This document shows, in pieces, positions 3,813-41,258 of a stretch of DNA of 64,000 nucleotides. The translations under genes and the position numbers were made by a program. The notes below the pieces were generated by a model, which was given only the letters and a program-made list of their open reading frames with translations, searched no databases and had not been told where the DNA came from. The DNA lies in the NCBI RefSeq assembly GCF_003918875.1, contig NW_025765499.1, positions 1 to 64,000 on the forward strand, in the 5' to 3' direction. Within the stretch, counting starts at the first letter, position 1. Each line of letters starts with the position of its first letter. Source of the stretch: Haliotis rubra (Eukaryota).

Positions 3813-4941
3813 CTATACACAAAACACCAGCAGGGACATCAGAGCCAGCACCAAGAACACCATGAACAAGACGCGTTTTGTTCGGCAGTCATTTTGAGGC
3901 GGACTTCGAATGTGGGCGTTCAGTGCTGTTCGTGGTTACTTCATCATTCATTGGCTGTACACCTGTCTCGGACTTAAACAGAAGGCTGTTACTGCGAACA
4001 TTGAGGCTGGCCATAGTGGTAATGATAGCCAGGCAACTCTGGCAGATGACAAGGGTCAGGTACACTGAGAGCCGACACACGTCTCCGGACTTTGGGATTG
4101 AGTCATTGACGAAGTTCATGAACACTGCATATGACACAAATATGGAGATGAGGTAGAACATCTTCTCTCCGGAGTCAGCTGGTAGGAGGAACACACAGGC
4201 GTTGAGCAGAGAGAGAAGAGTCATGGGAAAGATGATACTCACTATATAGAACATGCTCTTGCGTTTCAAACAAAAATCAAATTTCACCAAATTTGGGATC
4301 CGTCCCATCGGTACATCTTCAACGTAGGCATATAGGTCAACCAACTTCCATTCATTGTTCCCTATGAAGAATGTCGGTACTCCCCCCATAATCGAGCCAG
4401 CCATATCAACTCCAAGATAAAAGTTACCCGACGGCATTAACATCATGCTGCATTGTTGCTCATCAAAGGGGTTCATGGTGATGTCTATCTGACAACTGGT
4501 CTTGAAAGTGTCAGTAATAATAACTGATGCTTCTCCGTTGTTTTGAATCAGTGAAGATTTTACTGAATCCAGTCTTACCTCGTCGATACCATTAGGGATG
4601 ACAACAGAAGGAACCCGCACGTAATCTGCAGATATGGTCACGTTTTCAATATCATCATATTCAGTTTTGTTCCAAGCCAGGGTTTGGTCGAGCCATATCA
4701 TGTTGACACCAGCACTAAAAGTGAAAGTCTGTTCTGCTGCATTGAGACTGGAGATGGACATTGGCAGTATACTAATGTTCACCTGTTTGCCATCAGTGAG
4801 GGCCAGAGCAATACCAGCAGATGAGTTTTCCCCTTGGATATATGATAGGAGTCTTCTTAATGTTGGCTGGGTTCTATTGTTCGGATTGGCGCTTGATAAG
4901 ACAACGAGTGAAAGTAGTGCTAACGCCGACATGAAATGCAT
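3813..4941 (-). pseudogene. Intronless divergent Cys-loop ligand-gated ion channel subunit (nAChR-like), copy A, with a 1-bp frameshift before M4 (pseudogene or assembly error)
   Basis: Signal peptide, Cys-loop CQIDITMNPFDEQQC, NNEW, M1-M3 with LPADSGEK. The ORF stops at 3889, but removing one base from the T4 run at 3892-3895 restores SNDCRTKRVLFMVFLVLALMSLLVFCV* ending at 3813, matching copy B's M4. Confidence 0.85.
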
Positions 4942-5639
4942 GATGTCACTGTACAGTGGTGATGCGCAGAATGGTTTGCTTTGATGTGCATGTGTTGTTT
5001 CAGTTCATCCGTTGCTTAGGTTACCGAACGACATCTATTTGGACCATACACTACCCCTATGCTGGAATATCAAATCACACCGATGCATTAAACAAGGAAT
5101 AATAGGTAAGTGCTTCACAAACAGATCTATACTTGTGCTCTTCCTGTGAAACTGCCTGCCTCCACCTTCTGCAAGCAGGGGGCTATCACTTTACATTGAA
5201 TCACTCAGTTATGCAATAATAATCAAAATGGTTATGCCATGGGAACAATTTCACGCTATTAATATTGCTGTTGTAGTTGACATGGTCAATAGATTATTTG
5301 CTCACACGTCATAGGTGGTGTTTGCCTCAGCATTTCCTGCGCAAGAGTTGTTTCCAGCACGGAAATGTATTGTATATTCAATGTCTTTGCTAAAACATTT
5401 TGAAATGAGAACTGTCATATTTTAACTTTTGTAAATGAACATTATTGTTTGTTTCTGCTATTGTATATTGATTGAGATAATGTGTCACCGGTAGAGAATA
5501 TATATTCTCTTTACTTCGACAACAGTATGTGCACGAAACATTTATCTGTTAAGTTTTAAAGGTATAAGAATCGTTCCACAATGGCTCAAAAGTGTCTATC
5601 TAATAAATACATGTTTATCAAAGATGGCAGTTGGTTAGT

Positions 5640-5835
5640 TTGTTGGTTGTCTTCCTGTTTGACACCGCAATCAGTAACATTCCAGCTATATGGCGGTCAG
5701 TAAATAATAGAGTTTGGACCAGATCAACAGCATGAGCATCGATGACATGTGTCAAACAAGTCAGCAAGTCTGACCAACCGATCCCGTTAGTCTCATGGGT
5801 TACTGAAGACCAATTCTAACCCGGATCTTCATTTG
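5640..5835 (-). mobile_element. SINE family C, partial
   Basis: CCAGCTATATGGCGG..GGACCAGA..ACATGTGTCAA..GATCCCGTTAGTC..AACCCGGATCTTCA. Copies at 12986, 43590, 45180, 45830 and 58260. Confidence 0.7.
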
Positions 5836-6269
5836 TAGATAAAGTACGAGCCCAATGATCTCCATAGGTCAAGTCTCTTCAACTAGTTGCTACCAATTCA
5901 CTTAAAAAACAGCCATTACAACCTCGTCTTTGACACCAACCCGGATCTTCACGGTTAAGTTGAAGTAATGTACTTATGTCATGGAAGTAATATGGAGTCC
6001 ACGTAATAATAAATCCTGTTTTGAAATATGTATTTCATATATAATCCAACGACCTTATCTATTATCGCCCTTAACTGATACCATTATGAATTGAAGTCTT
6101 CATATAAAATGTAATGCATTGCGAACAGAAATACCAGTTACTGATGAATTCGGCTCACTCCTTTTAGACAGGCATGTAGACCTAAAAGGACATTAAACGT
6201 CCTATGTTTGCATTTACTACAGACACGCTGACTTAGTAATTCATCCTTTGTGCCCTGGAGTTTAATGAC

Positions 6270-9080
6270 AGAGAGAGAGAGAGAGAGAGAGAGAGTCTTT
6301 ATTTCCTCCAGACGATCATCCGAAGATCAAACATATTATATACATGTAGATACAACAAACAGGCAAAGTTACAAAATTGATATAGATGTATATACAATTA
6401 TATTAATCAAGATGAATACCTAAAGCTACAATTTACATAAGAACATACATGTATAAGTGTATACAATTAATTTATACAAGAAACAGTGGACATATATCAT
6501 TATAAATCTGCAGAGATCAATCAGTGTAACATTGTAGGAGATGTCGTCTTATTCGGTAAATGTATAAAGAAAATCGTAAAATGATTGTTTCCTATGTCCC
6601 TTGATCAACAGTATCATTAAAAACAGTTTCACCTCCAAATAGAAAAGAGAGCATGTCGAGTTCATCCTGTGATTCAAAGGCAACATAGGTGTCCACATCA
6701 AGATTGTCAATCATAAACACAAAAAAATCGTTTCTCTCAGTGTGAAGTTGTTCACAGTGTAGGAGTATATGAAAATCATAATCATAAGTATATTTGTTGC
6801 ATAGGTTACATTCTTTAGATATTTTGCCACGTGATGAGATTTTAATACATATTTGGAGGGCAGATTTATAATTGGGATGCAAGTATGCCAATTGCCAGAG
6901 GATATGATAGTTTAACTTGGAATGGACCCGTGCATAAAGCGTCATGTTTGTATTAATTGAGGTTTGCATAACCCATCTGTGTTCTTCATAGCTATGTACA
7001 GATGTATTTACAATTTTTCGCCATTCGTACTTTGGAGGGAATACACCTTCTTTAATATATTTATCTATGTGTACATGTAAATTATATTTGTAGAGTACTG
7101 ATAGTAGATCATCACAGATTGAAGGGGATTTTGTAGATGTGGTTATTGCTGCACAAAATATGTTTTTGGCAAAATTATTACAAGAGATTTTGCATAGACG
7201 TCCAAGAAAAATGAGTTTACATTTGTCGATGTAACCAATGAGTGTCCACAATCCCAGATTTGCAATAGTAGAGTCTGTTGGTGATCTTTTATCGAGCCCC
7301 TGGCCAATACGAGCAAAATATCGTTGTGTAACTTCAAGTGCATCGGCTTGTTGACCTCTAATGTTAGGTAATATTTCACAGCCATAGAGACTTGTTGTAA
7401 GTATCATTCTCAGCCAGATTTTGACGCATGTGAATGGATGGAGTTGAGAGTGATGAAGTCCCACAGATCTTAGGGAATTTATGTTTTGTCTTGCTTTCTG
7501 GCAATACCTAACGATTCTTGTTTTTGTTGAGAGATTATCAGTTAGGAGAACACCTCCATAGGTAGTTGATTCAGACTGGGAGATAGGCGTATCACCAAGG
7601 CGGTACTGGAAGTTAGAACAAGTGGATTTTCGTTTGCTGAAGACAACTATAGTACTTTTAGCTGGGTTGTAGGTCAAACGCCATTTGGAGGCATATGACG
7701 ACACGATGTCTAATGATGATTGTAAACCTTTAGGTGATGCACTAATAAGCGTGATATCGTCAGCAAGCAAGACTGCAGGAACATGCATACCGTATACACA
7801 AATACCACAACTGGCTTCTCTGAGAGAAGTGATAAGGTCATTTATAAAAATAAGGAAGAACCAAGCTGAAATAACTCTTCCTTGGCCAACACCTTGCTTG
7901 ACACAATATGTATCTGATCTCTCGCCCTGGTAACAAACAAAGGATTCGCTATGAGTATAACAGTGATATAAAAGATTTCAGGTATTGCCGCTTATACCAA
8001 TTTCATGCAATTTATAAAACAATCCATCGTGCCAGATTCTGTCAAAGGCTTTTGCAATGTCAAGAAAGGCAGAGAAAACAGCAGAATCTCTATGCATATA
8101 AAATTGAATACTTTCCATGAGCGTGAATACAGACATAATGGCTCCATGTTGGCGTCGAAAGCCAAATTGTAACATATCCGGAAAATCTGGCCTTGATTTT
8201 GTTAATTTATGTTCGATTCTTTTAAGAAGGAGCTTTTCAAAAAGCTTACCGAGACAAGATGTTAAGGTGATACCTCTGTAATTTCGTGGGTCACTTTTGT
8301 CTTTTTTGCCTTTATATATTGGTATAACCATACCGAGTCTATATTCCTTTGGGACATATTGAGAGGTAGTGATAGCATTGAATAGTTTGCATAGATGGGT
8401 GGTGATAAAGATGATGTGTTCATTTGTAATTCTATCAGGGCCAGGTGATTTGTTTTTACTCAGAGATTTAATGGCATCCTTAACTTCACTGAAGGAGAAA
8501 TCCTTTTCAAGTTCTTCACCATAGTCGTCATGGGAGATTTTTATATCAGTAACCTTTTTAGATACATGATCTTTAAAGTCAGAGTCAAATTTATCTGACT
8601 CGTGTGGTTGAGCTAAATCTGAGAAATATTTCCCCCAAATTCTACAAATGTCAAGGGGTGTTGATCCACTCGCTTCCCCGTATGTAAGAACTGGGACATT
8701 AGTAACAGTTGCTCTCTGTTTTCGAATGTTTTTATAAAAAGAGTTTACATCCATTTCAGCTGAAGCTTAGATTTCTTTCAGCATTTCATTTCTATTATGC
8801 CTTTTGGATTGTCGGATTATGTGCGCTTTGAAAGCTGAGTTGCTTCCATCGGAAAAGATGACATCTATAATCTTCAAAAGAAGTAGGGGAACCTGAACTT
8901 TCAATTTGAATAGGAAGGATAAGCGTTATCAAAGTTTTCAAAGACAGACGTCTTATGAACACACCACCATTTCTCTTTATCACCAACCCTGAACAAAACT
9001 CATTGGATTCACGTGCACAATGCAGTAGGCCCAAACACGTGCATGGGGTGTCCTTCTTGATTTTGACGGTTTTCAAGAAG
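6270..9080 (-). mobile_element. 5'-truncated non-LTR retrotransposon (RTE-X/CR1-group-like), frameshifted RT
   Basis: ORFs 7978-8754 (KSPGPD, NYRGITL, QFGFR, FLDIAKAFDRIWH) and 6592-7788 (LLADD, C-terminal CxxC...HxxxxC). AATAAA and a (TC)n tail at about 6270-6304. Confidence 0.9.
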
Positions 9081-9999
9081 GTCGATAGATCACTATAGCT
9101 AGACCATTAATTTTGACAATCATCTTACATCACACTGTTGTTCATGTTTGTTTCTAGCTGTGTTTTTGTTGTTGTTTGAAAATAAAAATCGTACTCATGT
9201 AAATTTCACATCATACATCATCATTTTTCAAGAGCGATTACTGTACAAACAACTATGGTCATAAGGAAGTGCAAGTGGTGATGAACTCTCAAAACATTCA
9301 TTATTATCATGTCACCATTGACTGACTCCGATATATCTCAATCTTTTAATCGTGAATCGTGAATCTTTAAAAATAAAGTTCCCCTACTTTCTGTAAGAGT
9401 ATACTGGAATAAGGAAGAATAAGAGTATTATTATAGAAGGCATGGAGGCATGTTTTCAGTATTATGGTGTTTTTCCCAACGATACTGCCTCGTGAGTTGT
9501 CTTATGTATGTGGATGTGGAAAGGGTTTTGTCGCTTCTATTTTACTGGATGTAATCAGATGATTTTAGATTAAATATGAGTATGAATGAAACATAAATAT
9601 ATACGGAAATACAAAAACAAAAGCTCAGATGTTTAAATGGACAATCTGTCGTCTTAAAGTCGATCTTCCTACCCATGCTAACACTTACAGTAATAGTAAG
9701 TGAGTTCAAATTTTACATCTCATCGGCAATATTACAGCCATAAAGCGATGGTTACAAGTTAGTTATAATTGAATACTAGTCTGCAAAGGACAACAAAACA
9801 GGAATGTTTCACATTTTACTTTTCACACATCTAGTTTTCCGCCAAATTATTTATGGTACACTAAAATAAGGTTATAGACTACAGTACCAAAGTAAGAACA
9901 CGTTAACGGGAATCATGGGTACTACTGCTTCCTGTATGTGGTTGTATGGAATGAAGTCTATAAAAACCACCGAAATGCTATCTAGGAATTAAATTAACA

Positions 10000-11810
10000 C
10001 ACTGGTCGTTTAATATAATAATGAAATAATAATTAATATAAACATGCTAAGTATGTAGATATCGCCTTTGAAATGTCTCGCTTGCATCCCAAGTACATTG
10101 TCGTCAGACTCCCCATTGTTCTCGGTGCCCTTGGTTTCGTTCCTCCTGATCTTTTGGCACAGATCAGGAGAGTGTCCGGGTTCTCCACCGGGAGCACAGC
10201 CCTTCTGACACTCTGGGTAATGCAGAGGGCTGCAGTGTTGGGGAGTCTTCATATTCTCCGGAAAGTTCTTGGTGGTTCGAGTACAGGACCTTTTTAATAA
10301 AGTTAATTTTCATTTAATCATTGATTTTTTTAAAAGAGATAGACATGAATTTTGATATATGTTTTGTAAATAGATAAAGTTTAATAATTGGTAGTTCAGA
10401 TTATCAACTTAGATTGTTAGTGGCTGTATCCTCAAAGGGGGTTGAAGTAGCGTAAAATTATTGTCCTCCTGAGAGGGTACGTAAGTCCCAAAAACTTCAC
10501 GAATTTTCACGAACCAAGTTTTTAAACGTAGTATTTTTGTTCTTTCAAATTTCGGCTAAATTTTCCTACAATCGCCAGCGGCTGAAAGGATGGTATAAAT
10601 CCAGCTAGGCTCCATGCAGGTAGCAAAAGTAATGTAAGTCCCCATGGTTCCTAGTATGGTGATCTACCTTCAGATGCTGGCGATCTGTAGCCTGTGTTTT
10701 ATATTGTATTGTCTTCTTTAATTACACTGTTTTAGTTTTAGATGCTAGTTTTATGTTCATTTCTGTGATACTCTAGTACTTTTTTACTCTCCATCGTTGA
10801 CAGGTTTAACTCTTCACAATGTTTTCATTTTTGTATTGTATAAATTGTTTTCGTCACGATATGGCTGAGCTAATGCCGATGTGACGTTAAATATTAACTT
10901 ACTCTATCACTTGGTGGTTCGACTAGGCAGCGTTTCCTGGGAGAAGTCCCATACGCTGTCTGGGCTGCGTCTACATGGGGCAAGGGCCCTGAGCTGATGA
11001 TGAGCCTTACCAGCCTGACTGTGCATGGATCACCCGAACCCTCTCCGCTGCATACTATCTTTAATCTGTAAAAGATAATAATCATAATAATAATCAATTC
11101 GTATATGCCAATCAATTCTTATACGCCAATCAATTCTGGAAGTCGGGGTTTGATTAAAATGGAGGCTCTTCATGATATAATTTTATTGTGTACTTTTGCA
11201 CATATTTATTCACCGGATGATCCTCTGGTGATGCATGTTAAGACTCATGATGAACGCAAGAAATTCCACAGCTATTTTAAGCGTGCCAAGGTTGTTGGAC
11301 AGAATCTGAAATTTGAGGTTGATTTTGTCGATGGCGATGTACTGCTTGACGGTACAGCGATGGACGTAAACCAGGTAAAATTCTTCACCAAGTCTGCTCA
11401 GAGTCGGTCATTTGTGGAGAAGCTTTATGAAAAATACATTGCATCGTGTGTACATGAAGTGTGTAGACAGAACATTAATCCGACGGACGCCTTCGCCTGG
11501 ATGAAGTCGGCTGGTCTTAAACGTGAAACTGAAGGGCTTTCTATTTGCTGCTCAAGACCAGTCACTTCCCACTCGCAACCCCCAAGATTGGCAAGATTCA
11601 GGAAAAGCTCGCCTTTGAAATGTCTCGCAAACTCCCAAGTACACTGTCGTCAGGCTCCCATCGTTCTCGGTGCGGCCATTCGCTGTCTGGGCTGTGTGTA
11701 GAGGGGGCAAGGGCCCTGAGCTGATGATGAACCTTACCAGCCTGACTGTGCAAGGATCACCCGAACACTCTCTGCAGCATATTATCTTTAATCTGTAAAT
11801 CATAATAATA
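10000..11810 (+). mobile_element. R4/Dong-like (RLE-type) retrotransposon remnants, two 3' ends
   Basis: WMKSAGLKRETEG..(AAQDQ) in 11105-11701 and C-terminal PIVLGALG..MQRAAVLGSLHILRKVLG in 10073-10297. Duplicated 3' UTR ending in (TAA)n at about 11090 and 11805. The first copy is split by a LINE 3' fragment (about 10290-10905). Confidence 0.65.
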
Positions 11811-12639
11811 AAGAAATGAAATTGATTTATTAAATGAAGCTATTTTTTTAAATCTTTCTGCGGACTGTTCGTTACATGAAGTAAATTGCTTTGTCTTTGC
11901 TGCCGTACACACATTGGAGGTAGTTCACACAGTTTCCAAGGAACAAAACACCCAATGATAATACACCAGAGAAAAACCGGTTTCTAGTAAAACTTAATTA
12001 AACTTAAAGAAACATATAAGACAACGAAAGAAAAGATACATCCTAGTTGCTGTTTCTGTTACAATACGTGTCATCACCATCAGAGGGAGATCAGTTTACA
12101 CTGAGTCATTCAGTCATGCACACATGCCTTCTGCATCTACCCTCATTAGAGAATATTAGCATCAACCACTTTTATGGACGGACACAAAGCTAAAAAAACC
12201 CATTTGATTAATCTTTGCTGTTACTGCAATATTACCAGAGTTTGTCAATCACAGAAGTGTAGTGTGTGTGGAGATTATGTGCCATCGGTAGAAAATTCAG
12301 TGGACTTGATTTAAATTTCAGTTGCTTAATCCACATACCTATAATATATTCTTAAAACTGCTTTGTTATAGTTCATACGATTACCTCTTTGAATTGTTCG
12401 AGACAAAAGCATTGCCGCATTTCTATCGTGATGAATTACGTCCCTTGCATGATCGTACGTTTGCATTCGTACGAAGAGTTCGTAAAAGTATATAAACTAC
12501 CGGGCAAAAGAAAGTTATCACCGACTTCACTTGACCAAAAATAGAAACAAAGACGTATGTGAGATTTATTATAACTATTTTACAAACACAAAACATTTTC
12601 CAATAATTCGAGTGAAAATTCATTGTAATACTGATCTTG

Positions 12640-12875
12640 CATTTGGGCCAATGTATTTAGAAAGAGTCAAGAGATCAAAATTAGAAATTTCATAAATCAG
12701 AGTTTATTCAAAAAGTGCATAAAGAGTCACATAATGAGACATGTGTCAGGGGCATGTCATCAATAGCGAGTGTGACCATCCTAGGCATCCATTCACACCA
12801 ACACAGTTCTCAACATTGACGTTTGCAGGAATCCTGTTCCATAAGTCCAAGAGGGATTGTTTGAGTTCCTGTCGG
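12640..12875 (-). mobile_element. Tc1/mariner transposase C-terminal remnant
   Basis: Minus strand encodes GHTRY* (GGTCACACTCGCTATTGA), a typical Tc1 C-terminus. Confidence 0.45.
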
Positions 12876-12879
12876 TTCC

Positions 12880-14228
12880 CTTAAAGGGGGTTAAAGTATC
12901 GTAAAATTATTGTTCTCCTGAGAGGGTACATAAGTCCCAAAACTTTCAAAGTTAAGTTTAAGCTTACCGGTTTTTAAACGTTGTAGACCCGTGAAGGTCC
13001 GGGTTAAAATGAATCTTAAGTAACCCATGCTTGTAGTAAGAGGCGACTAATGGGATCGGGTGGTCAGGCTTGCTGGCTTGGTTGACACATGTCATCGGTT
13101 CCCAATTGCGCAGATCGATGCTCATGCTGTTGATAATAATAACAATAATAAATGGATATTTCTTATGCGCCATAGCCCATCCAGAGCATGCTCAAAGCGC
13201 TACATATAAAAGAGTCACTAGAGCTGAAGAGGAAGATATGACAATTCCTCAAAATGATCATGAGAATATTTCGCAGCATTTTTTATGGGATTAGGAAGAC
13301 TGTTCTACAGGGTTGGTGCTGCATATTTGAATGACCTATGGCCAAAGTGTTTGAGATGAACTTGGGGAACTGAGAGAAGATCTTGATTCTGGGAGCGGAG
13401 AGAACGGGCAGGCATATATGTTGACAACATCTCAGAGAGGTATGGAGGATCTAGGCCGTGTCTGCAGCGGAAAACAAGAGTGAGGATCTTGAAATGAATT
13501 CTGGCTTCAACCGGCAGCCAGTGCAGACTCTGGAGGATTGGTGTTATGTGAGACCATTTGGATGTTTTAGTGACAACTCTGGCGGCAGCGTTTTGAAGGT
13601 TTTGAAGTCTGAAGAGAAGATCATTGGAGATTCCAAACAGTAGGCTATTTTAATAGTCAATCCTGGAAAGAACAAGTGACTGAGTGAGAACTTTAGCTGC
13701 ATCTGTGGTTACAAGATGGCGGTTGTTACCAATAGAGTGGAGATGGAAGTAGCCTACTCTACAGAGATGGCTGATCACTGGATTGTCTAGTCCAGACTCG
13801 ATTATTTACAAACCGCCGCCATATAGTTGGAATATTGCTGAGTGCAGCGTAAAACTAAATTCACTCACTCATTTAAGGGTAGTATTTTTTATCTTTTAAA
13901 ATTCGGCTAAATGTTTCCTACAATCACCAGCAGCTGAAGGGATGGTGTCATCCAGCTAGGGTCCATGCAGGTAGCAAAGGCACTGTAAGTCCCCATGGTC
14001 CCTGGTATGGTGATCTACCCTCAGTTGTTGGCGACCAATAGCCCATTTGTACATTGTATTGCCCAGATAGTTTTCTACTTTTAAAGATATATGCTAGCTA
14101 GTTTTAACTCTTTTTGTGATACTCTAGTTATTTTACAGTTACGGTTATTTAACTACTTGTATTTATTGTGTATGAACAACCTTTCCGTCACTATATGGCT
14201 GAAATATTGCCGAGGTGAAGTTAAATGT
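12880..14228. mobile_element. Three-level nest: LINE 3' end > SINE C > L2-like 3' fragment
   Basis: LINE 3' block split at about 12985/13871. SINE C split at about 13133/13773 (..CATGCTGTTGAT | GATCACTGGATTGTC..). Inner minus-strand fragment 13134-13772 with a (TAT)n tail. Confidence 0.65.
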
Positions 14229-14229
14229 C

Positions 14230-15810
14230 GGTCAGATAACGATCAAGATGATCCAAGAGATGTTTAGTGGTGTCACATCCTCCGTGCCATACCAGACTCT
14301 TGTATCAGTACCCTGGACACTAGACGCACTGTGGATAGCATTGTAAAATTAGTTTCTAGCTGCTTTCGGACCGTCTACTTCACCTGGCAAGACAACATCT
14401 ATTAACAAATCCATGGGCTCCCCATGGGTTCACCTCTGTAACCGCTAATCACCGAGATCTTCATGACCAGCTTTGAAGAGACAGCCCTGACTACATCCCC
14501 TTTCCAACCACTCTGCTGGTACAGAAAGGTGGATGACACCTTCACCATCCTGGATCCCGACCACGATCCTGCCATCCTCCTCGACCATCTCAACAAGCAG
14601 CACCTGCGCATCCAGTTAACGATGGAGATAGAAGACCAACAGAAACTTCCGTTCCTAGACGTGCACTTGCAGAACTCCTCCAACAACATCACCTTTTCCG
14701 TCTACAGAAAACCCACCCACACTGACAAGTATATACATTACCTCTCCAACCAACACCCCCAGATCAAACGCGCCATTTTATCAACCCTAACCAGACGATC
14801 TAAATCCATCTGCGACCCTGAACATCTCCAAGCTGAAACAGTTCTTCTAAGAACCACATTCATCAACCTCAACGGCTATCCCAAACGTCTTGTAGACAGA
14901 ACCATAGCATCGACCCTCCAACAGAAAGATGAACGCCAACCCAAACCTGAGCCATCCCCGATTAGAATAAACATTCCCTACCAAGGTCAGATCAGCCACC
15001 ACATCAGCCGACTGCTCAAGAAAACTGCCGGTATAGATGTGACCTTCAGCTCTAACAAAACACTAAGAACCATTTTGAAGGCCAATGGTAGATGTACCTC
15101 AACCAACATCCCTCAGAAGCCCAGGGGTTGCATGTACAAACTAACGTGTGACTGTGGCAGCAGCTATGTAGGAGAGACATCCCGCCCCATTGGCATTAGG
15201 CTCAAAGAGCACAAAACGTCGGTAGAGAAATCACATCTAAAGTCAGCCCTTTCTGAACACATTGTGAACAATCCATCACACTCCATTGACTGGCAAGCTA
15301 CAACCATCATAACATCGAACATCCGTGACTGGCGACGACGCAAGATTTCAGGGTCTATCTGCATCAAAAGATTAGCGCCACAGATGAACAGAGATCAAGG
15401 AGTTTACCAACCCAATGCCTGGGAAATTAACTAGACTCATGGCTTCACCAATCTCTCGATCTTAATCCACTGTAACAGCATCATCCCTACATTTTGTATC
15501 TTACTTTGTATCTTATCCTAGCTTTTGTATATCATTAGACTATCTGCCACCGTTTTCTACAGCAATTAGACTCAATGGCTTCTACCACTTACCCACTGAA
15601 TCCACTGTAACAACACCATATCTGCTTTTGTATAATTTATTCTTTCATCTTATATCCGCTATTTATTGTATATACATGCTTAAAATCACCCTGGCTTCGT
15701 GAACATTACTAGTATATATATCCTGTACAACTGTTAGTAAGTACTCACCTGACGAAGGGGCAAGGAATAGCCCATAAACGTTGTGTATATAATAAAGAAG
15801 AAATTGATAT
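14230..15810 (+). mobile_element. Penelope-like element (RT C-terminal part + GIY-YIG endonuclease), 5'-truncated
   Basis: ORF 14463-15434: WYRKVDDTF, LPFLDV, VYRKPTHTDKY, GCMYKLTCDCGSSYVGET..RLKEH (GIY-YIG). Upstream MGSP motif. Degenerate hammerhead and AATAAA at 15746-15796. Confidence 0.9.
15746..15785 (+). ncRNA. Degenerate minimal hammerhead ribozyme in the Penelope 3' LTR
   Basis: CAC-CTGACGA-A-GGGGC(AAGGAATA)GCCC-A-TAAAC-GTT-GTG. Stem I is CAC/GTG; G12 is mutated to T. Confidence 0.55.
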
Positions 15811-15814
15811 CCAT

Positions 15815-16370
15815 AATATTTTGTCTTATAATAACAAGTCTTGTTGATCTCTGGCTACAAATACCACCCCATATCATGACGCTGTTTGGAGGCAGTCGCT
15901 CACTTCTACGTCTAAAGGTTCGAACTGTGCCATGGTTTCTGAACCGACTTAACCGATTTTCATCTTTAAAGAGCACTCTCTTGCTCACTGCAGTCGGTGT
16001 AGACGGGTTAAGGGCCATTCCACAGCGGGCTCGGTAGGCTCCTATACCAGTCATACCAAGTCTTCGAAGGACTCTTCGTCTGCTGATGGCGTGTCCCAGT
16101 GCTGTCGCCATCGCTGCCGTCACGAATCTGTTCTGGCGGTATATCAATTGCTGATGGTGGCCTGGCTGCAGTTGGAGGTTCTTGTCTGCTGACGTTGTGA
16201 TGCACCCATATTGGCCATACCGATCCCTCTGTCACGTTGCGCTTGCGTAATTCTTTTTTTTCGTTACTGCATACTTGCTCTGTCCATCATCGGTATGTAT
16301 ACCAAAATCATGCACGTTCATTTGGAATAATGTCCAACAATTATGTTTTTCACGTTTTTGAAAAATGCTC
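15815..16370 (-). mobile_element. Tc1 transposase remnant
   Basis: ORF 15734-16147 contains ISRRRVLRRL, VLFKDENR (VLFSDES) and SVMIWGGIC. Confidence 0.75.
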
Positions 16371-16799
16371 GATTCGTACAAAGTTTTCGGACAGCTCCGT
16401 TGTTATTGGGACCATGCTGCCCTTTGGCGAATGCTTTCTGCTTGGGTTCAAACCTGCACCAGCGTTGTTTTTTTAGTGTTTGTATACAATTATTTGAAAA
16501 GTGATAACTTTCCTTGCCCGGTAGTTTATATTCGGAAAGGTGGTGTTCCCAATGTTTGGTTGATTTCCCTCTGCATCCGATTACAGTCCTGTTCAACTGA
16601 ACAGCACTACCTAACTCATCACTGGTTACTTGTACTCGTGTTGTACTCTGGGTTTAGTGATGAGACGCCCAGATCAGATCATTTGATACCCCGATCTATG
16701 CAGTCTGGAATCTTGACCGCTGGGAGGACACTGACATGTAAACTTCGCGATCAGTGGGCGTGGCCGACGAGTGTTACCTTTTCCTCAATTGCGATCGCC

Positions 16800-16990
16800 C
16801 TTGTCTGATCGACGTCATGCAGTCTTGTGTATGCTTGTTTAAGATCTCTTTAACAAGATATTTACAAGAATCATAGGAATCATCATGCTCACTCTCCTTA
16901 ATGTTATATAACACCACATTATAGGTGTGTGCTTCAAGGTTGTCTAGGTCATCGGTGAATTGGATAAGAAGTGGTGACACAGATTAATTG
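16800..16990 (-). mobile_element. LINE ORF1-like fragment
   Basis: LDNLEAHTYNVVLYNIKESE resembles the LE...NLxxxGIxE RRM entry of ORF1 proteins. Confidence 0.4.
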
Positions 16991-17881
16991 AGAGTGATTT
17001 TTACCAGTGACACCAACATGGCTGGGCGACCAACAAAAAGATGATGTCGTATTCGCCAGTAACACATCATTACCTATTTCAGCTATATGTCAAGCAAAAC
17101 TGGGTGCTACCATGACCTGTTTTTAATAGCTTGAAGACAGGACAACGAGTCCAAAAATATTATGAATTGCTAATGTTTAGACTGTTTGATATATCTCAGA
17201 GCTGAACAAATGGAAGAGTTATCTACTTGATAATGTATTGAATCCAATGACAGTGGCGCTGGTGACTGTGCCTCGATCCTTCGATCCATCTGTAGATATA
17301 TATTTGTAGGTATTATATGTACTTCTTATCCGATTATATTCTTGTTAATACTGTAACTGAAATGTTTCTGATTTATCTTGTTTGCGTAATGTGAGGTCCA
17401 CTTGTGGATTTACTAATTGCTAATGTGGAGAAGAGAGCAAGTATATGATCGAGTTCAATATCAGATGCTGAAATGAAAGGTTTAATTCCCAGAGGTGAAA
17501 TAAGCAATGTCTTTCTACTGTAAAAGTGTCATAAAAATAGGATAAAATACACATTGTATGCAGGGTTGACCTCAGTAGAATATAACGTGTCTATGTAGTG
17601 CAAATATAGTTTAATGCGGCGTTGTTTAATGATTGGTCGCTAGCTCAACGTAAAGAGCCAAGGCATAGTCTCAGGCCTTGATGGTGAATAGAATCAAGCA
17701 GTTTAAGGTTGCTTTTACAGGCTCCATCAAACATGATGCAGCCATATTAGAGTTTTGAACGGCCAAGTGTTCTATATAAGTGAAGGAGGGACGACTTGAA
17801 CACCTTTACTTAATCTAGTGCCTTCAACCATTTAGCTTTAACATAATTAACATGTGACAAGAAGGTATGATGATTATCAAA

Positions 17882-18085
17882 TCAAAAATGATAGCAAACA
17901 TTTGGGGTTTCCTTTACTACTTTATTGGGTGTGCCATTTGGTATGTATTTTCGACAGAAAAGGATGCAATGTTGTGTGTTTGGTTTAGATTTAGACAATC
18001 TCAGACCATTACGCTCTGACCAATCATGAATTCTATTCAGACAAAGCTGCAACTGTTTCTCAACCATGGGCATATTTTACTTCTA
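17882..18085 (-). mobile_element. I/Nimb-type LINE RT fragment
   Basis: EKQLQLCLNRIHDWSERNGLRLSKSK (post-YADD RT motif). Confidence 0.6.
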
Positions 18086-18618
18086 TATTAAAACGAGAGT
18101 GTTGGGGAATCAGCTCGCTTGACAATACCAACCCACATATAACATATGAACAACACCTGAGTAAATAAACGAGGAGTTTATTTCACAGCCACTGAACGAT
18201 GTATATAATTAACCAATGACAGAAAAGTTTACAATTAATTATTAGAACATGTTAACAATGCAATCACCCACGACACATACATTAATCACGATACATATTC
18301 CAATTAACACAACAATAGTTCCGTACTCTACACATCACCTCAGTGGATGTTCACACAATCTACATTATATATATGTCCAGAACAGCATAGTGTTTACAAC
18401 GTAATACAATAGTTAAGATACCCGACACACTCTATACATTCTATAATCGTCACAAAACAGCGTAGTGTTACTCAGTATTAAGTAACGAATGATCCTAAAC
18501 AGTAATGCAGAATTTATTAGATATATATTGAAGATGCCACGTTCCACATAAACCTGAAGGTAGTGCCAAGGGTAACACATAGTAAAGAGATGTCCAATAA
18601 GATTTAAGTTAACATAGA

Positions 18619-18975
18619 GGTGAGGTGAGGTGAAATTGGGTTTAACGTTGTGCTTGAGAATATTTCGCTCATATGACGACGTGCATGCGTGTGTATGTGT
18701 ATGTGCGGCTGCATGTACTAGACCAGACTTAAGCTGGTTTTATAGTGCTAGCCCAATGAGATACCATGCCGCAGTCAAGCATGAATACCCCACTCAGACA
18801 CATTATACTGACTCCGATCCCGCCAGTCCTTGTTGTACCCTTTAATGCCGAGCACCAGGCAGGGACCAACAAGTACCATATTTTAACGTCTTTTGGTATG
18901 ACGCGGTCGGGGATCGAACCCGCGACCTTTCGCTTTCCGGGCGGACGCTCTAACCACTACATCACGGAGGCGGTC
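18619..18975 (-). mobile_element. Full-length tRNA-derived SINE family A
   Basis: tRNA head, core, (TCACC)3 tail. TSD AAGTTAACATAGA / AAGTTAGCATAGA. Confidence 0.85.
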
Positions 18976-20669
18976 AAGTTAGCATAGAATAGCAATAGTA
19001 GAGATTTATTGAACTAGAAGACATTAAAGTTACACACCTGAATACATTTGCTAAAGAGACCATGGTTAGTGACTGCCATCCGTATTATAGTATATACGTA
19101 TTCTAGCTATCGGAGATAATCGCGTTTACAGATATGGGAACTTGAAGTGATGTCATTCAGTTGGACCAAAGCATTGATGGTCAGTCGCGAGCATGCCATG
19201 AAGGTATATAGCGCACGCGTGTGATTTGACCGTGGAATTTAAACATACAACACAGACAAACGTATTACTGGTTCTATTAGTTTAAGAGACACTTGTCCCG
19301 GATAATGTCGAAGCATATTATCAGTGTGACCCTTTGCAGTTTTCAGATAGTGTAACGTGGTCATTTATCTGAAATATTTCCAATTTTCAATAACATGCCA
19401 TATCATAAAATTTTGGGTAAACTTTGTTGACGAAACATTAGGATCATCTACAAATAATGACCCATTAAAACTTAAGATAAGCGATTTAGTTTTATATTAA
19501 ACAACGTTACCAAGAATACGCTGTCTTGTTGTACGCTCTGATCTTGATAATAATAACATAAAATAAGGTGAAATATTGCTGCAAACTGTGATATAAAATG
19601 TAACATCGGCCGCTCGAACGATTTCATGAAGATTTGTTAACATTATATTGTTGCCAGGTTATATCATTGGTTTGCTTATTAATAATGCCATTGTTAAAAA
19701 ACGTTTCCAATCTAACCAAATGATCAATGGTACTTCTATTTTTCCTAAAACCACATTGCATATTTGTGATCAGGTTATTTGTTTCCAATTACCATATTAA
19801 TCTGTTATTGACCATTCAGTCCATCGTTTTACAGAGGCAACTAATAAGCAATATTGCCCTGTAATTTGAAGGATCAGTATGATCCCGACAGGTTTCGGTA
19901 TTGGAATTATTTCAGTATTTCGGCATGATGACGGGAAATAATCCCATTGTCAACATGTTATCAAATACATTTCATAATGAGTGTTATCAGTATCCTGAGT
20001 TTGCCATGAGGCAGCATGTAGCTCATGAATAAAAAAAACAAACTTGTAGATCCTCACCATTATCTGAAGCAATTTGATTATCTCATTTGTTTCTGCCTGC
20101 TCATTAAATGTTTTAAATTTCGGCGTAAGTTGGTTGATCACTATCTGGATGAGCATTAGTCTGGACATGAAACACTGATTCACGTCAACTAATGCATCTC
20201 TAAGTGAACCTAGTGGCAATCATCGTACAATGAGTCCCCAGTTAAGCCATGTTTGTTATATTTAGAGCTGACTTAAGAATCCTGGATGGTCAATATCGAT
20301 GACTTTGCTTATTGTCTCCATGCGGTATTTGCATAGATAACTCCTCACTTACTTGAGTTGTCACTGACATGCCATCACACTGTCAGGTTCATTTGATTAT
20401 GGAATGCGTAAAAAGTCGTTCAATAAATTTTGAACGCCCAAATTATTTTGGCTTTACGTAGATGGGTCACACAGACATGTTTACAGCAATGACAGAAACT
20501 ACGTCACACCTGTCTAGACACATACCATTGATCCAACATAAATTATTACTGAAGGAACCCACACAACACATTACATCTCTTGAAACTCCCACACTTGAAA
20601 TAGTGATTATATCTGAGGCCTTCCATCGCAGCGGAGAGTTCTAATGTAGAACCCTGGACGAATTCCTTT

Positions 20670-21788
20670 CTATACACAAAACACCAACAGGGACATCAGT
20701 GCCAGCAGCAGGAACACCCCAAACAAAACGTGGTCTGTGCGGCGGATATTTGACTGAGACTTCAGACGTTCGTTACTGTTCATGTTTACTTTGTCATTTC
20801 CTGGCTGAACACCTGTCTTGGTTTGAAATAGGAGCCCCTTATTCCGGACATTGAGTGTGGCCATAGTTGTGATGATAGCAAGACAGCTTTGGCAAAGAAC
20901 GAGGGTCAGGTACACAGACAGTCGGCACACCTCTCCAGACTTGGGGATGGAGTCATTGACAAAGTTCATGAACACTGCATATGACACAAATATGGAGATG
21001 AGGTAGGACATCTTCTCCCCGGAGTCGGCTGGTAGGAGGAACACACAGGCGTTGAGCACAGAGAGAAGAGTCATGGGTAAGATGATACTCACTATATAGA
21101 ACATGCTTTTGCGTTTCAGAAGAAACTCAAACGATGCAACGGTTGATATCCTTCTCATTTCGACGTCTTCCACTTTCGCAAGTATGTCAAGCAACTCCCA
21201 CTCACTGTTCTCAATGAAGAAAGTCGGTCGGTCCGTAAGGATGGAACCAGTGGCACGTACATCAAGTGTGTAACCATTGACAGGCAGGATCAGAATACTG
21301 CATCGCTGCTGGTCAAACGGGTACAGAGTTATGTCTATCTGACAACTGGTCTTAAAATTCTGAACTATTAGAAGGGTTCCAGTTCCTTCGCTCCGAATGC
21401 TTGGTGACTGTACTGACGCCGGTACAACGTTGTCGATTCCGTTAGGGATGACAACTGACGGCACCCACACATAATCTTCTGAGATGGTCACACTTTCAAT
21501 ATCATCAAATTCAGTTTTGTTCCAAGCCAGATTTTGGTCAAACCAGCTCATGCTGACACCGGCACTAAAGGTGAATGTCTGATCGGCTGCATTGAGATAA
21601 GAGATGGACATTGGCAGTATACTTATGTTCACCTGTTTGTCATCGGTTTGGTCAACACTGATTCCTGCTTCAGCAGCGTTACCTTTGAAATGTGTCTTCA
21701 GCTTCTTTATTGGCGACTGGATTCCATTAGAGCTAGCCCCTGATAAAATGACGAGAAGCAACAGTGTTGATGCCGAAGTGAAAACCAT
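20670..21788 (-). CDS. Intronless divergent Cys-loop ligand-gated ion channel subunit (nAChR-like, predicted cation-selective), copy B, 372 aa
   Basis: Signal peptide, WFDQNLAWN, VWVP, Cys-loop CQIDITLYPFDQQRC, NSEWEL, LKRK-M1, LPADSGEK-M2, M3, short loop, M4. No vicinal CC and no loop-B Trp. Confidence 0.93.
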   Translation of the reverse strand: MVFTSASTLLLLVILSGASSNGIQSPIKKLKTHFKGNAAEAGISVDQTDDKQVNISILPMSISYLNAADQTFTFSAGVSMSWFDQNLAWNKTEFDDIESVTISEDYVWVPSVVIPNGIDNVVPASVQSPSIRSEGTGTLLIVQNFKTSCQIDITLYPFDQQRCSILILPVNGYTLDVRATGSILTDRPTFFIENSEWELLDILAKVEDVEMRRISTVASFEFLLKRKSMFYIVSIILPMTLLSVLNACVFLLPADSGEKMSYLISIFVSYAVFMNFVNDSIPKSGEVCRLSVYLTLVLCQSCLAIITTMATLNVRNKGLLFQTKTGVQPGNDKVNMNSNERLKSQSNIRRTDHVLFGVFLLLALMSLLVFCV

Positions 21789-22789
21789 GGCTTCTGTGTT
21801 TTGCAGGCTTGTTCGCAGTGTAATTATTTCAGCTCTTACTTAAAGCTCTATCAGTGACTCTAATTCCTGTATGCGCTGGAATGAAAGTTCACATGGATCC
21901 ATTGAGCTTGGAATTAATGACCATTAACTTTGAAAACATCCTTTCACACGAAGTAAGCACATTAAAATTGATGATTGTTGCCATTTGTATTGTAATCCCT
22001 ATCGGTACCTTCGGTATTTATGTTAAATCACGAAGCTTTGCAATACTGTATCAAGGGTAATGACAATAAATGAAGACATGTAAACATTTTCGTTAATTAC
22101 GCAGAGCTTGCCAGTGGAAATATATAACGTTACCATGACAACGTAACATCAATCAACTTCTGGATCGTCCGCTATTTGTACCTGATTCTTCAATCAGTCC
22201 ATTAACGACTGTTTGGATTCTTTTCATTAAGGTCTGCCCAAATCGCGGCCTCCACTACTGGGCGACAGGCTATATATTTACTTAAGAACTGGTGGTTAAA
22301 TATTTTCACAACACTTTCATCGATAGTATGACAAAGTATACGTAAACAAGACAACGCCCATCGTTACGTTTAATGCACGAAAACGTTCTTTCAGTAGTTT
22401 CGAGAAACAAAGTCGTCGATAAATGGGCGAAAGGTAAACAATGACACACCCTATTTTCAACACCGACATATGCGTTGATATTTAGTGTCAGCTCGCCATT
22501 GTCACAAAATTGTATACATAAAACATGGATCTGAACGACCACATTAATGAAATGTAATTAGCATCTTTCTTTTAGGAAAAGTGAAGACGAAAATATCGCA
22601 GATTATGTCTCGTATCTTTTATTACACAGGTAACAAACACCAACCATTCCTTCACCTTCACAGGTTTGTTTCAAACATATTTTATTCACAGAGAAAAGGA
22701 TTAGGAACACGTTCTCCAACTTATACCAACTCCAAAGAATACCCTCTCCTTAGCTTGTACATAGGTAATTTAGATTCCCGCAAATAAAG

Positions 22790-40943: not shown

Positions 40944-41098
40944 AATGAGGACAATTGTATGAATATACAACTTCTTTATTCTGTATAGGGGTCATTTCGA
41001 CATAGATTCTAATGTCGTTGACAAGCACATTAGAATCGATGTCCAAACGTCGCCTATACAGAATAAAGAAGTTGTATAACCATAAAATTGTCCTCATT
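40944..41098. mobile_element. Penelope-derived palindrome with mutated hammerhead cores
   Basis: Arms AATGAGGACAATT..TATACAACTTCTTTATTCTGTATAGG / CCTATACAGAATAAAGAAGTTGTATA..AATTGTCCTCATT. Minus strand reads TTGTCAA-C-GACAT(loop)ATGTC-GAAAT. Confidence 0.65.
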
Positions 41099-41258
41099 CT
41101 TCATCGCCTCAACTTCTAGAATGCCAATCAAAGAAACCTGCAAGTTATACAAACATATTATACATAACTTATACATAATCTTTACTTCAGATGGGTTTTG
41201 TCTAAAACATGCATATATTTCTTCAGATTCAGACGAAGTTTCATCTTACTTCAGAACC

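What the first reader, a model, noticed from the sequence alone, without database searches (positions are those of the whole stretch)
3813..21788. Tandem intronless Cys-loop channels that have lost the ACh site: candidate ionotropic chemosensory receptor family in a non-cephalopod mollusc
Seen: two same-strand, intronless paralogs 16.85 kb apart. Copy B has a signal peptide, Cys-loop, cation-type GEK ring and a very short (~40 aa) M3-M4 loop. Aligned by eye to nAChR alpha, the agonist-site residues are absent: loop A reads WVPSVVIPN (no Tyr), loop B ILILPVNG (no Trp), loop C has no YxCC..Y, and the loop D Trp position is Gly. The pore has Val at 9' and Asn at 16'. Established: cephalopod chemotactile receptors are intronless, tandemly clustered nAChR derivatives lacking these residues, and intronless nAChR expansions are reported in other lophotrochozoans. 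Inference: this may be an independent or shared 'taste-by-touch' receptor cluster, for example sensing algal or settlement cues.
Basis: partly seen in the sequence, partly recalled or inferred. Interest (0 to 1): 0.8.

Follow-up and report, generated by a model that had tools for sequence, protein, structure and literature searches.

The report
Abalone orphan nicotinic-like channel gene pair
Two neighbouring intron-free abalone genes (one intact, one with a one-base frameshift) encode short nicotinic-receptor-like cation channel subunits that have lost the acetylcholine site; such gene expansions are already known in molluscs, and a taste or smell role is untested.

Summary
Copy B (20670-21788, minus strand) is an intact single-exon gene for a 372-aa Cys-loop subunit. 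It has a signal-peptide-like N-terminus, a C-x13-C loop, a GEK cation ring, Val 9'/Asn 16', and a loop of about 40 aa between M3 and M4. All five canonical ACh-site aromatic positions and the loop C Cys-Cys are missing.

One extra base in an A4 run (3892-3895) puts a stop at 3889-3891 and throws a well-preserved M4 out of frame.

The window is blacklip abalone. Four other abalone genomes carry the same family as single-exon genes; in H. asinina four lie within 112 kb. Selection is purifying: dN/dS is 0.28 overall and 0.06 across M1-M3. The binding-site loops vary most.

The family nests in a gastropod-wide Val-9' clade. All 17 clusters I could name in it are gastropod. Copy B is 17-21% identical to squid and octopus chemotactile receptors and 22-24% identical to vertebrate nAChRs, so I see no special kinship. 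An independent origin is more likely than a shared one, but it is unproven because no octopus sequences could be put in the tree.

No RNA data were reachable, so the sensory role is untested. The scan had already found similar arrays on other pieces of this genome. Verdict: a new member of a known kind.

The parts
20670..21788 (-). Copy B: intact single-exon CDS, 372 aa. It has a signal-peptide-like N-terminus (1-~19), an extracellular domain with a Cys-loop (C149-C163), M1-M3 (~229-318), a short M3-M4 loop (~319-352) and a C-terminal M4 (353-372).
   Evidence: ORF. Pfam LBD and TM domains. PDB hits to nAChR and 5-HT3A at E about 1e-33 to 1e-35. AF2 helices at 229-251, 258-280, 289-318 and 338-371. 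The H. asinina ortholog is 82% identical with a single-exon CDS. dN/dS 0.28.
3889..4941 (-). Copy A: 350-aa ORF running from the signal peptide to the M3-M4 loop and ending at a premature TGA (3889-3891).
   Evidence: 67% identical to B. Pfam LBD E=3.4e-23 and TM E=4.3e-10.
3892..3895 (-). A4 run where copy A's frame breaks. Compared with the rest of the family there is one base too many here.
   Evidence: Sequence read. Read with one A fewer, the frame gives ...KSASNDCRTKRV..., the same length as the family consensus ...KSASNVRRADHV....
3813..3893 (-). Copy A tail in the other frame: 26 codons with a conserved M4 (RVLFMVFLVLALMSLLVFCV), then a stop at the position where the family's genes end.
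   Evidence: This M4 is near-invariant in the Haliotis homologs.
21789..22200 (-). 5' flank of copy B. It has blocks shared with copy A's flank (4942-5350) and with the flanks of the H. asinina genes, including ...CACTTAC... and ...ATTCCAGC... about 125-200 nt upstream of the ATG. It is a putative promoter or 5' UTR, and may hold a 5' UTR splice acceptor.
   Evidence: DNA alignments. Function not tested.

Best explanation
These are two members of a tandem family, so far found only in abalone, of short single-exon subunits of pentameric ligand-gated cation channels. The subunits descend from nicotinic receptors but can no longer bind acetylcholine in the canonical way.

Copy B is a working gene. 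Inferred mechanism: five such subunits assemble, alone or with paralogs from the same family. A small molecule that is not ACh binds in the remodelled pocket between subunits, which is built from loops E, B, F and C, the parts that differ most between paralogs. The invariant Cys-loop, the pre-M1 strand (beta10) and M2 carry this to a cation-selective pore (Glu -1', Asp 20') with a Val 9' gate.

Copy A is the same kind of gene with one extra base just before M4. It is either a very young pseudogene or an assembly error.

The pair belongs to the already described lophotrochozoan expansion of intron-free, tandemly arrayed nAChR-like genes. The natural ligand and the tissue are unknown.
For: Shown:
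- Family and fold.
- Loss of all five aromatic ACh-site positions and of the loop C Cys-Cys.
- Cation-type pore motif.
- Copy B has an intact ORF with orthologs or paralogs in H. asinina, H. rufescens, H. cracherodii and H. rubra.
- Four single-exon genes lie within 112 kb in H. asinina.
- dN/dS between B and its H. asinina ortholog is 0.28 overall and 0.06 in M1-M3.
- M2 is invariant at 24 of 27 positions across 20 family members, while loops E, C, F and B are the most variable. Regional dN/dS is highest in loops E, B and F at 0.3-0.8 for most pairs.
- DNA contigs of a closely related abalone cover the locus. Depth over the TM-coding part is about 6-11 times the single-copy level, which suggests about ten paralogs.

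Known context:
- Intron-free tandem nAChR expansions in molluscs (PMC6896357).
- Divergent molluscan clades with altered ligand-site residues (PMC13174522).

Inferred: pentamer assembly, a non-ACh agonist, and gating.
Against: - There is no expression data and no functional data.
- Because the subunit lacks both faces of the ACh site, it could be a silent partner in a receptor that other subunits make ACh-sensitive.
- The AF2 model is only moderate (pLDDT 64), so the pocket cannot be read in detail.
- No region reaches dN/dS above 1, apart from one 28-codon N-terminal window in one pair (1.18), so diversifying selection on the pocket is not shown.
Confidence: 0.7

Rival explanations
1. Chemotactile-like external chemoreceptors. 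The family would be expressed in peripheral sensory cells (tentacles, epipodium, lips, osphradium, larval apical organ) and gated by environmental cues such as algal or biofilm compounds. This would be a convergent parallel to cephalopod CRs.
For: - It shares the hallmarks of CRs as summarised in PMC11526382 and PMC13174522: a nAChR-derived cation channel, intron-free coding sequence, tandem copies, and a lost ACh site.
- Variation is concentrated in the binding-site loops over a frozen pore.
- The family is lineage-specific and sits on a long stem.
Against: - No expression evidence at all.
- The family is small: four linked genes in H. asinina, up to seven listed clusters in other species, and about ten copies by read depth.
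- No positive selection was detected.
- It is not closer to CRT1 or CRB1 (17-21% identity) than to vertebrate nAChRs (22-24%).
- The same hallmarks fit hundreds of molluscan nAChR-like genes, which have been linked with stress and immune responses (PMC6896357).
Confidence: 0.2
2. Accessory (structural) subunits. The proteins would bind no ligand themselves but co-assemble with canonical ACh-binding alpha subunits and tune an ACh-gated channel, as non-binding subunits do in vertebrate heteromeric nAChRs.
For: - Both faces of the ACh site are lost.
- The best sequence matches in the PDB are non-alpha subunits: Torpedo delta, and human beta4 and beta2.
- The interface loops, which also govern subunit partnering, are the variable parts.
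Against: - The Val 9'/Asn 16' pore is conserved as a signature of the clade and differs from the Leu 9' of canonical subunits. A mixed pore with canonical partners is possible but not the obvious reading.
- The family forms its own tandem cluster with near-identical TM domains, which fits partnering among paralogs.
Confidence: 0.2
3. Decaying retrocopies: the genes are non-functional leftovers of retroposition and duplication.
For: - Copy A carries a frameshift before M4.
- Copy A has the longest terminal branch in the family (0.30 against 0.05-0.17).
- One H. asinina member (P0019) also has M4 out of frame.
- Retrotransposon ORFs lie between the copies.
Against: - Copy B and most homologs keep full ORFs across abalone species, with dN/dS of 0.28 overall and 0.06 in M1-M3.
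- A rough three-way estimate from the pairwise values puts copy A's own lineage at dN/dS about 0.4. Its out-of-frame M4 and stop codon are undamaged, so any inactivation is very recent.
Confidence: 0.05

Closest known systems
Lophotrochozoan expansion of intron-free, tandemly arrayed nAChR-like genes (BMC Genomics 2019, PMC6896357; molluscan clades in the MolluscaGenes preprint, PMC13174522)
   Same: - Cys-loop, nAChR-type cation subunits.
- Single-exon coding sequence.
- Tandem arrays.
- Lineage-specific duplication.
- Altered ligand-site residues.
- Retroposition followed by tandem duplication is the accepted origin.
   Different: - This subfamily was seen only in Haliotis.
- It is very short (about 370 aa, no tail after M4).
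- It belongs to a gastropod-wide clade marked by Val 9' and mostly Asn 16'.
- I could not match that clade to any named clade in those papers; abalone is not mentioned in either main text.
Cephalopod chemotactile receptors (octopus CRT1, squid CRB1)
   Same: - nAChR-derived cation channels.
- Intron-free.
- Clustered.
- Do not use the ACh aromatic box.
- Same overall fold (Z 15.7-16.7).
   Different: - Only 17-21% identity, lower than to vertebrate nAChRs.
- None of the 30 clusters I could name among the 150 nearest is cephalopod.
- The family nests among gastropod genes, some of which have introns.
- Expression in sensory epithelium and gating by hydrophobic ligands define CRs, and neither is tested here.
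Alpo4, orphan Cys-loop receptor of the annelid Alvinella pompejana (eLife 2023, PMC10338036)
   Same: - A lophotrochozoan nAChR-like subunit without the loop C Cys-Cys.
- No response to ACh or serotonin; the agonist is unknown.
- Similar structural match (Z 20.5, 20% identity).
   Different: Alpo4 keeps the aromatic cage (F103, W159, Y199, Y205, W65 by the paper's numbering). The abalone proteins have lost all of those positions.
Vertebrate non-alpha nAChR subunits and 5-HT3A
   Same: - They are the best sequence and structure matches.
- GEK ring.
- Cys-loop motif (Y/F)PFD.
- Four-helix TM domain.
   Different: - No loop D Trp.
- No loop B Trp.
- Val instead of Leu at 9'.
- M3-M4 loop of about 40 aa instead of 80-150.
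- Single exon.

Membership tests
[quoted passage not shown] | Extracellular beta-sandwich domain followed by four TM helices | tested here: met
   Pfam PF02931 and PF02932 score above their curated cut-offs for both copies. The AF2 secondary structure fits. Z is 20-22 to nAChR, 5-HT3A and GABA-A chains.
[quoted passage not shown] | Cys-loop: two cysteines 13 residues apart, with the (F/Y)PFD motif | tested here: met
   C149-QIDITLYPFDQQR-C163 in copy B. 10 of 15 positions are invariant in the family.
Cation-selective nAChR / 5-HT3 branch | Glu at -1' (GEK) and no Pro-Ala-Arg anion motif before M2 | tested here: met
   SGEKMSY in both copies, with Asp at 20'. The best PDB hits are nAChR subunits and 5-HT3A. 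Ion selectivity itself was not measured.
Acetylcholine-gated nicotinic receptor (subunit contributing to an ACh site) | Principal face: loop A Tyr, loop B Trp, loop C Tyr-x-Cys-Cys ... Tyr | tested here: not met
   Pro115, Leu168 (with a 2-aa deletion), Lys205, no Cys-Cys, Ser215. All 20 Haliotis family members lack the loop B Trp, both loop C Tyr positions except one (copy A has Tyr at the Tyr190 position) and the Cys-Cys.
Acetylcholine-gated nicotinic receptor (subunit contributing to an ACh site) | Complementary face: loop D Trp | tested here: not met
   Gly77 in copy B. The position is Gly, Arg or Glu across the family.
Molluscan intron-free tandem nAChR-like expansion (PMC6896357) | Single-exon coding sequence | tested here: met
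   Copy B is one ORF. Gene ranges equal the CDS length in H. asinina (four genes), H. cracherodii and Gigantopelta. UTR introns were not tested.
Molluscan intron-free tandem nAChR-like expansion (PMC6896357) | Tandem arrays and lineage-specific duplication | tested here: met
   Two copies lie 16.8 kb apart here. H. asinina has four within 112 kb. The Haliotis family is one clade with 100% SH-aLRT support.
Cephalopod chemotactile receptors (CRs) | Membership of the CR clade in a phylogeny | tested here: inconclusive
   No CR sequence could be fetched for the tree. Indirect evidence: 17-21% identity to CRB1 and CRT1 against 22-24% to vertebrate nAChRs; the nearest named relatives are all gastropod or bivalve. 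This points against membership.
Cephalopod chemotactile receptors (CRs) | Expression in peripheral chemosensory epithelium | not testable with these tools
   No RNA run was found. The three runs laid are DNA contigs.
Cephalopod chemotactile receptors (CRs) | Gating by poorly soluble or hydrophobic environmental molecules and not by ACh | not testable with these tools
   This needs electrophysiology.

The most novel reading that the evidence does not exclude
The single-exon Val-9' subfamily of vetigastropods arose by its own retroposition inside Gastropoda. It serves as an ionotropic chemoreceptor family in abalone sensory organs or larvae, for example for algal, biofilm or settlement cues. If so, nicotinic-type channels were recruited for external chemosensation twice in molluscs, once in cephalopods and once in gastropods.
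Probability: 0.15. Interest if true: 0.8.

Novelty: new member of a known kind. Interest (0 to 1): 0.35.

Why it matters
If these channels prove to be sensory, abalone would give a second, independent case of neurotransmitter receptors turned into chemoreceptors. It would also give a molecular handle on settlement and feeding cues in a farmed and threatened group.

As the evidence stands, the pair adds one well-defined subfamily to the known molluscan expansion of orphan nicotinic-like channels. The subfamily is short, cation-type, has a Val 9' pore, and is kept by selection. Copy B is a compact 372-aa candidate for de-orphanising by expression and ligand screening.

Tried and rejected
1. Fetching cephalopod CR sequences for a joint tree. 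Two profile word-searches returned scallop and oyster relatives and nematode DES-2/DEG-3 relatives, but no cephalopods. The CR papers themselves are not held. The direct phylogenetic test could therefore not be run.

2. RNA evidence. The run search found only three runs from one 2018 study. Once laid, they proved to be DNA contigs of a close relative, 93-97.5% identical, covering the flanks and repeats as well. They give no information on expression, strand or splicing. Reads were laid on copy B, so the copy A frameshift could not be checked against reads.

3. Positive selection. Pairwise Nei-Gojobori dN/dS by region stays below 1, apart from one 28-codon N-terminal window in one pair (1.18). 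With only six coding sequences to hand, no site model was tried.

4. Intron homology. Aplysia (2 exons) and Babylonia (at least 6 exons) members of the clade have introns. Matching their positions to a canonical Lingula gene was too imprecise with tblastn exon ends to call them ancestral.

5. The ESM Atlas look-up returned only generic nAChR-like clusters.

6. The pseudogene reading was rejected for copy B on dN/dS and conservation across species.

7. A literature search for abalone nAChR-like genes in tentacle or chemosensory tissue found nothing specific.
Full report
**What is in the window**

Two ORFs on the minus strand encode Cys-loop receptor subunits. Copy B is at 20670-21788 (372 aa) and copy A at 3889-4941 (350 aa). 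Both match Pfam Neur_chan_LBD and Neur_chan_memb well above the curated cut-offs. They are 67% identical to each other. Their start codons are 16,847 bp apart, and tblastn finds no third copy in the 64 kb.

The window has no N. It is the first 64 kb of contig QXJH01001546.1 of assembly GCA_003918875.1. Earlier notes of this scan call that genome blacklip abalone. This fits the homolog list, in which every close relative is a Haliotis protein.

HMMER alignments to Torpedo delta and human alpha6, and a 188-sequence alignment, give these substitutions in copy B:

- Loop D Trp is Gly77.
- Loop A Tyr is Pro115.
- Loop B Trp is Leu168, within a 2-aa deletion.
- Loop C is 3 aa shorter and has no vicinal cysteines. 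Tyr190 is Lys205 and Tyr198 is Ser215.

The Cys-loop (C149-x13-C163, YPFD) is intact. The pore reads GEK at -2' to 0', Val at 9', Asn at 16' and Asp at 20'. The M3-M4 loop is about 40 residues, and M4 (VLFGVFLLLALMSLLVFCV) ends the protein.

The N-terminus (MVFTSASTLLLLVILSGAS|S) looks like a signal peptide by inspection, and AF2 leaves residues 1-21 unstructured. No signal-peptide predictor was run.

Copy A is not open down to 3813. On the minus strand the sequence reads ...TCC GCC TCA AAA TGA, so a stop lies at 3889-3891 right after an A4 run at 3892-3895. The M4 segment and the family's usual stop (NDCRTKRVLFMVFLVLALMSLLVFCV*, 3893-3813) lie in the next frame.

Read with one A fewer, copy A has exactly the length and pattern of the family consensus (...KSAS-N-x-x-R...). 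The lesion is therefore a single extra base in a homopolymer. It is either a very recent inactivation or an assembly error, and I could not check reads at that spot.

Copy A has the longest terminal branch in the family (0.30). Pairwise dN/dS against the other genes is about 0.3, and 0.05-0.11 in M1-M3. A rough three-way estimate from those pairwise values puts its own lineage at about 0.4. It was therefore a constrained gene for nearly all of its history.

One H. asinina member (P0019) independently has M4 out of frame, through a different lesion.

**The family**

Word-based search finds 19 clusters of close homologs (63-84% identity) in H. asinina, H. rufescens, H. cracherodii and H. rubra. 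Full-length members are about 370 aa, and some gene models are N-terminally truncated. All but the two frameshifted members end in the same M4.

In H. asinina, four of the genes lie within 112 kb of one chromosome. Each gene range equals its CDS length, so each coding sequence is a single exon.

- Copy B against its H. asinina ortholog: dN/dS is 0.28 overall, 0.37 in the extracellular domain and 0.06 in M1-M3.
- Across 20 family members, M2 is invariant at 24 of 27 positions, and the Cys-loop and beta10 are nearly frozen.
- Loops E, C, F and B, the N-terminal helix and the M3-M4 loop carry most of the change.
- Regional dN/dS peaks in loops E, B and F at 0.3-0.8 for most pairs and does not exceed 1 there.

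Synonymous divergence is mosaic along the gene. For A against B, dS is 0.93 in the extracellular domain and 0.47 in M1-M3; for P0005 against P0007 the pattern is reversed. This hints at gene conversion.

Contigs of three DNA runs from a closely related abalone cover the locus at single-copy depth. Depth over the TM-coding part is 6-11 times higher, which suggests about ten paralogs in that genome.

**Wider placement**

A full HMMER scan of 1.84 billion representatives with the family profile gives 15,210 hits. The best 150 are almost all nAChR-like subunits without the loop C Cys-Cys, and many lack the aromatic residues too.

The FastTree and IQ-TREE trees agree on three nested groups:

- The Haliotis family is one clade (100% support) on a long stem.
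- It sits in a group with other single-exon genes of Haliotis (on other chromosomes) and of Gigantopelta.
- That group sits in a well-supported clade of about 60 representatives (99-100% support) marked by Val 9' and mostly Asn 16'.

The 17 clusters I could name in that clade are all gastropod: Haliotis, Gigantopelta, Aplysia, Bulinus, Biomphalaria, Batillaria, Nucella and Babylonia. The next clades out are gastropod (Patella, Littorina, Haliotis) and then bivalve. Only 30 of the 150 could be named, so cephalopod members are not excluded.

The Gigantopelta and Haliotis relatives are single-exon and tandem. The Aplysia member has 2 exons and the Babylonia member at least 6. If introns are ancestral, as PMC6896357 argues for molluscan nAChR genes, the intron-free state arose inside Gastropoda. 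It would then be independent of cephalopod CRs. This step is an inference, because intron homology could not be settled.

**Comparison with chemotactile receptors**

No CR sequence could be fetched, so the comparison rests on structure. The AF2 model (pLDDT 64) was aligned to one representative of each PDB sequence cluster:

| Chain | Z | Identity |
|---|---|---|
| Muscle nAChR subunits and alpha7 | 22 | 22-24% |
| 5-HT3A | 21.4 | 22% |
| Alpo4 | 20.5 | 20% |
| Squid CRB1 | 16.7 | 17% |
| Octopus CRT1 | 15.7 | 21% |

CRs are also absent from the 60 best of 308 PDB sequence hits. Nothing therefore ties this family to CRs beyond the shared features of divergent molluscan nAChR-like genes. Fast evolution of CRs could hide a relationship, so this is evidence against a link and not a refutation.

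**How it most likely works**

Shown: copy B is a conserved, selected gene for a cation-type Cys-loop subunit that lacks both faces of the ACh site.

Inferred: it forms pentamers, probably with its own paralogs, since they share a near-identical pore. A non-ACh ligand would open the channel by binding in the diversified interface pocket. From general knowledge of 9' mutants in nAChRs, the smaller hydrophobic Val at 9' should still gate the pore and may lower the barrier to opening.

The rivals are an accessory role in ACh-gated heteromers, a specifically chemosensory role, and decay. Decay is rejected for B and open for A. No RNA data were available, so the tissue is unknown.

**Novelty**

- Intron-free tandem nAChR-like expansions in molluscs were described in 2019 (PMC6896357).
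- A 2026 preprint reports molluscan clades with altered ligand-site residues and 'CR-like' sequences in gastropods. It raises the idea that such clades add an ionotropic arm to gastropod chemosensation (PMC13174522).
- This scan had already followed up three other arrays of the same kind on other pieces of this genome, with the same conclusion.
- New here: this small, very short subfamily is delimited, its place in a gastropod-wide Val-9' clade is shown, and the copy A frameshift is found.

I rate it a new member of a known kind, of moderate interest. A modest chance remains that it is a convergent sensory family.

**Limits**

- No cephalopod sequences were in the tree.
- Only 30 of the 150 nearest clusters could be named.
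- Tree support is SH-aLRT from short searches.
- The structural model is of moderate confidence.
- dN/dS is pairwise only.
- There is no transcript evidence.

Noticed in passing
window 41088-42791 (+): A single-exon cytochrome P450 ORF (Pfam p450 E=8.7e-112). Its best solved relatives are CYP1A2 and CYP1A1 (E about 1e-100). The ORF finder starts it at a TTG; in-frame ATGs lie at 41121 and 41259. It is an intron-free CYP1-like gene about 19 kb from copy B.
   Followed up: partly
window 6592-8754 (-) and 27450-29078 (-): Reverse-transcriptase ORFs (RVT_1). Two adjacent broken halves sit between the two receptor genes, and a 542-aa RT ORF lies downstream. These are retrotransposon insertions in and around the cluster.
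   Followed up: partly
window 14463-15434 (+): A 323-aa ORF with no Pfam hit. Its C-terminal part (…YKLTCDCGSSYVGETSRPIGIRLKEHK…) looks like a GIY-YIG nuclease motif, as found in Penelope-like retroelements. This rests on recall only and was not tested.
   Followed up: no
L004 10930-11200 (H. asinina CM074527.1, gene of P0019): A second family member, in another species, has M4 (ALFGVFLLLAVMSLLVFCV*) intact but out of frame, after a deletion in the M3-M4 loop. The annotated protein ends ...KCTRCSGCSCFWQ. Lesions just before M4 therefore recur in this family. Gene conversion may keep the out-of-frame M4 looking fresh.
   Followed up: partly
window 21789-22200 and 4942-5350 (-); L001-L004 9590-10000: The 5' flanks of the paralogs share blocks, including ...CACTTAC... 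and ...ATTCCAGC... about 125-200 nt upstream of the ATG, and the AG is kept in 5 of 6 genes. This could be a 5' UTR splice acceptor, which would make only the coding part intron-free, or a core promoter.
   Followed up: partly
copy A/B and H. asinina paralogs (CDS): Synonymous divergence is mosaic along the gene. For A against B, dS is 0.93 in the extracellular domain and 0.47 in M1-M3. For H. asinina P0005 against P0007 it is 0.14 and 0.52. This suggests gene conversion between paralogs.
   Followed up: partly
window 19591-19984 and 22349-24900: Stretches flanking copy B have very high contig depth in the related abalone's DNA runs, up to about 900 times the single-copy level at 19591-19787. 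They are dispersed repeats.
   Followed up: no
representative proteins P0051-P0066 and others: Many of the nearest database proteins are 600-1,470 aa with 2-8 receptor domains in a row. These are most likely neighbouring intron-free genes fused by gene predictors, so public annotations undercount and mis-size this kind of gene.
   Followed up: partly
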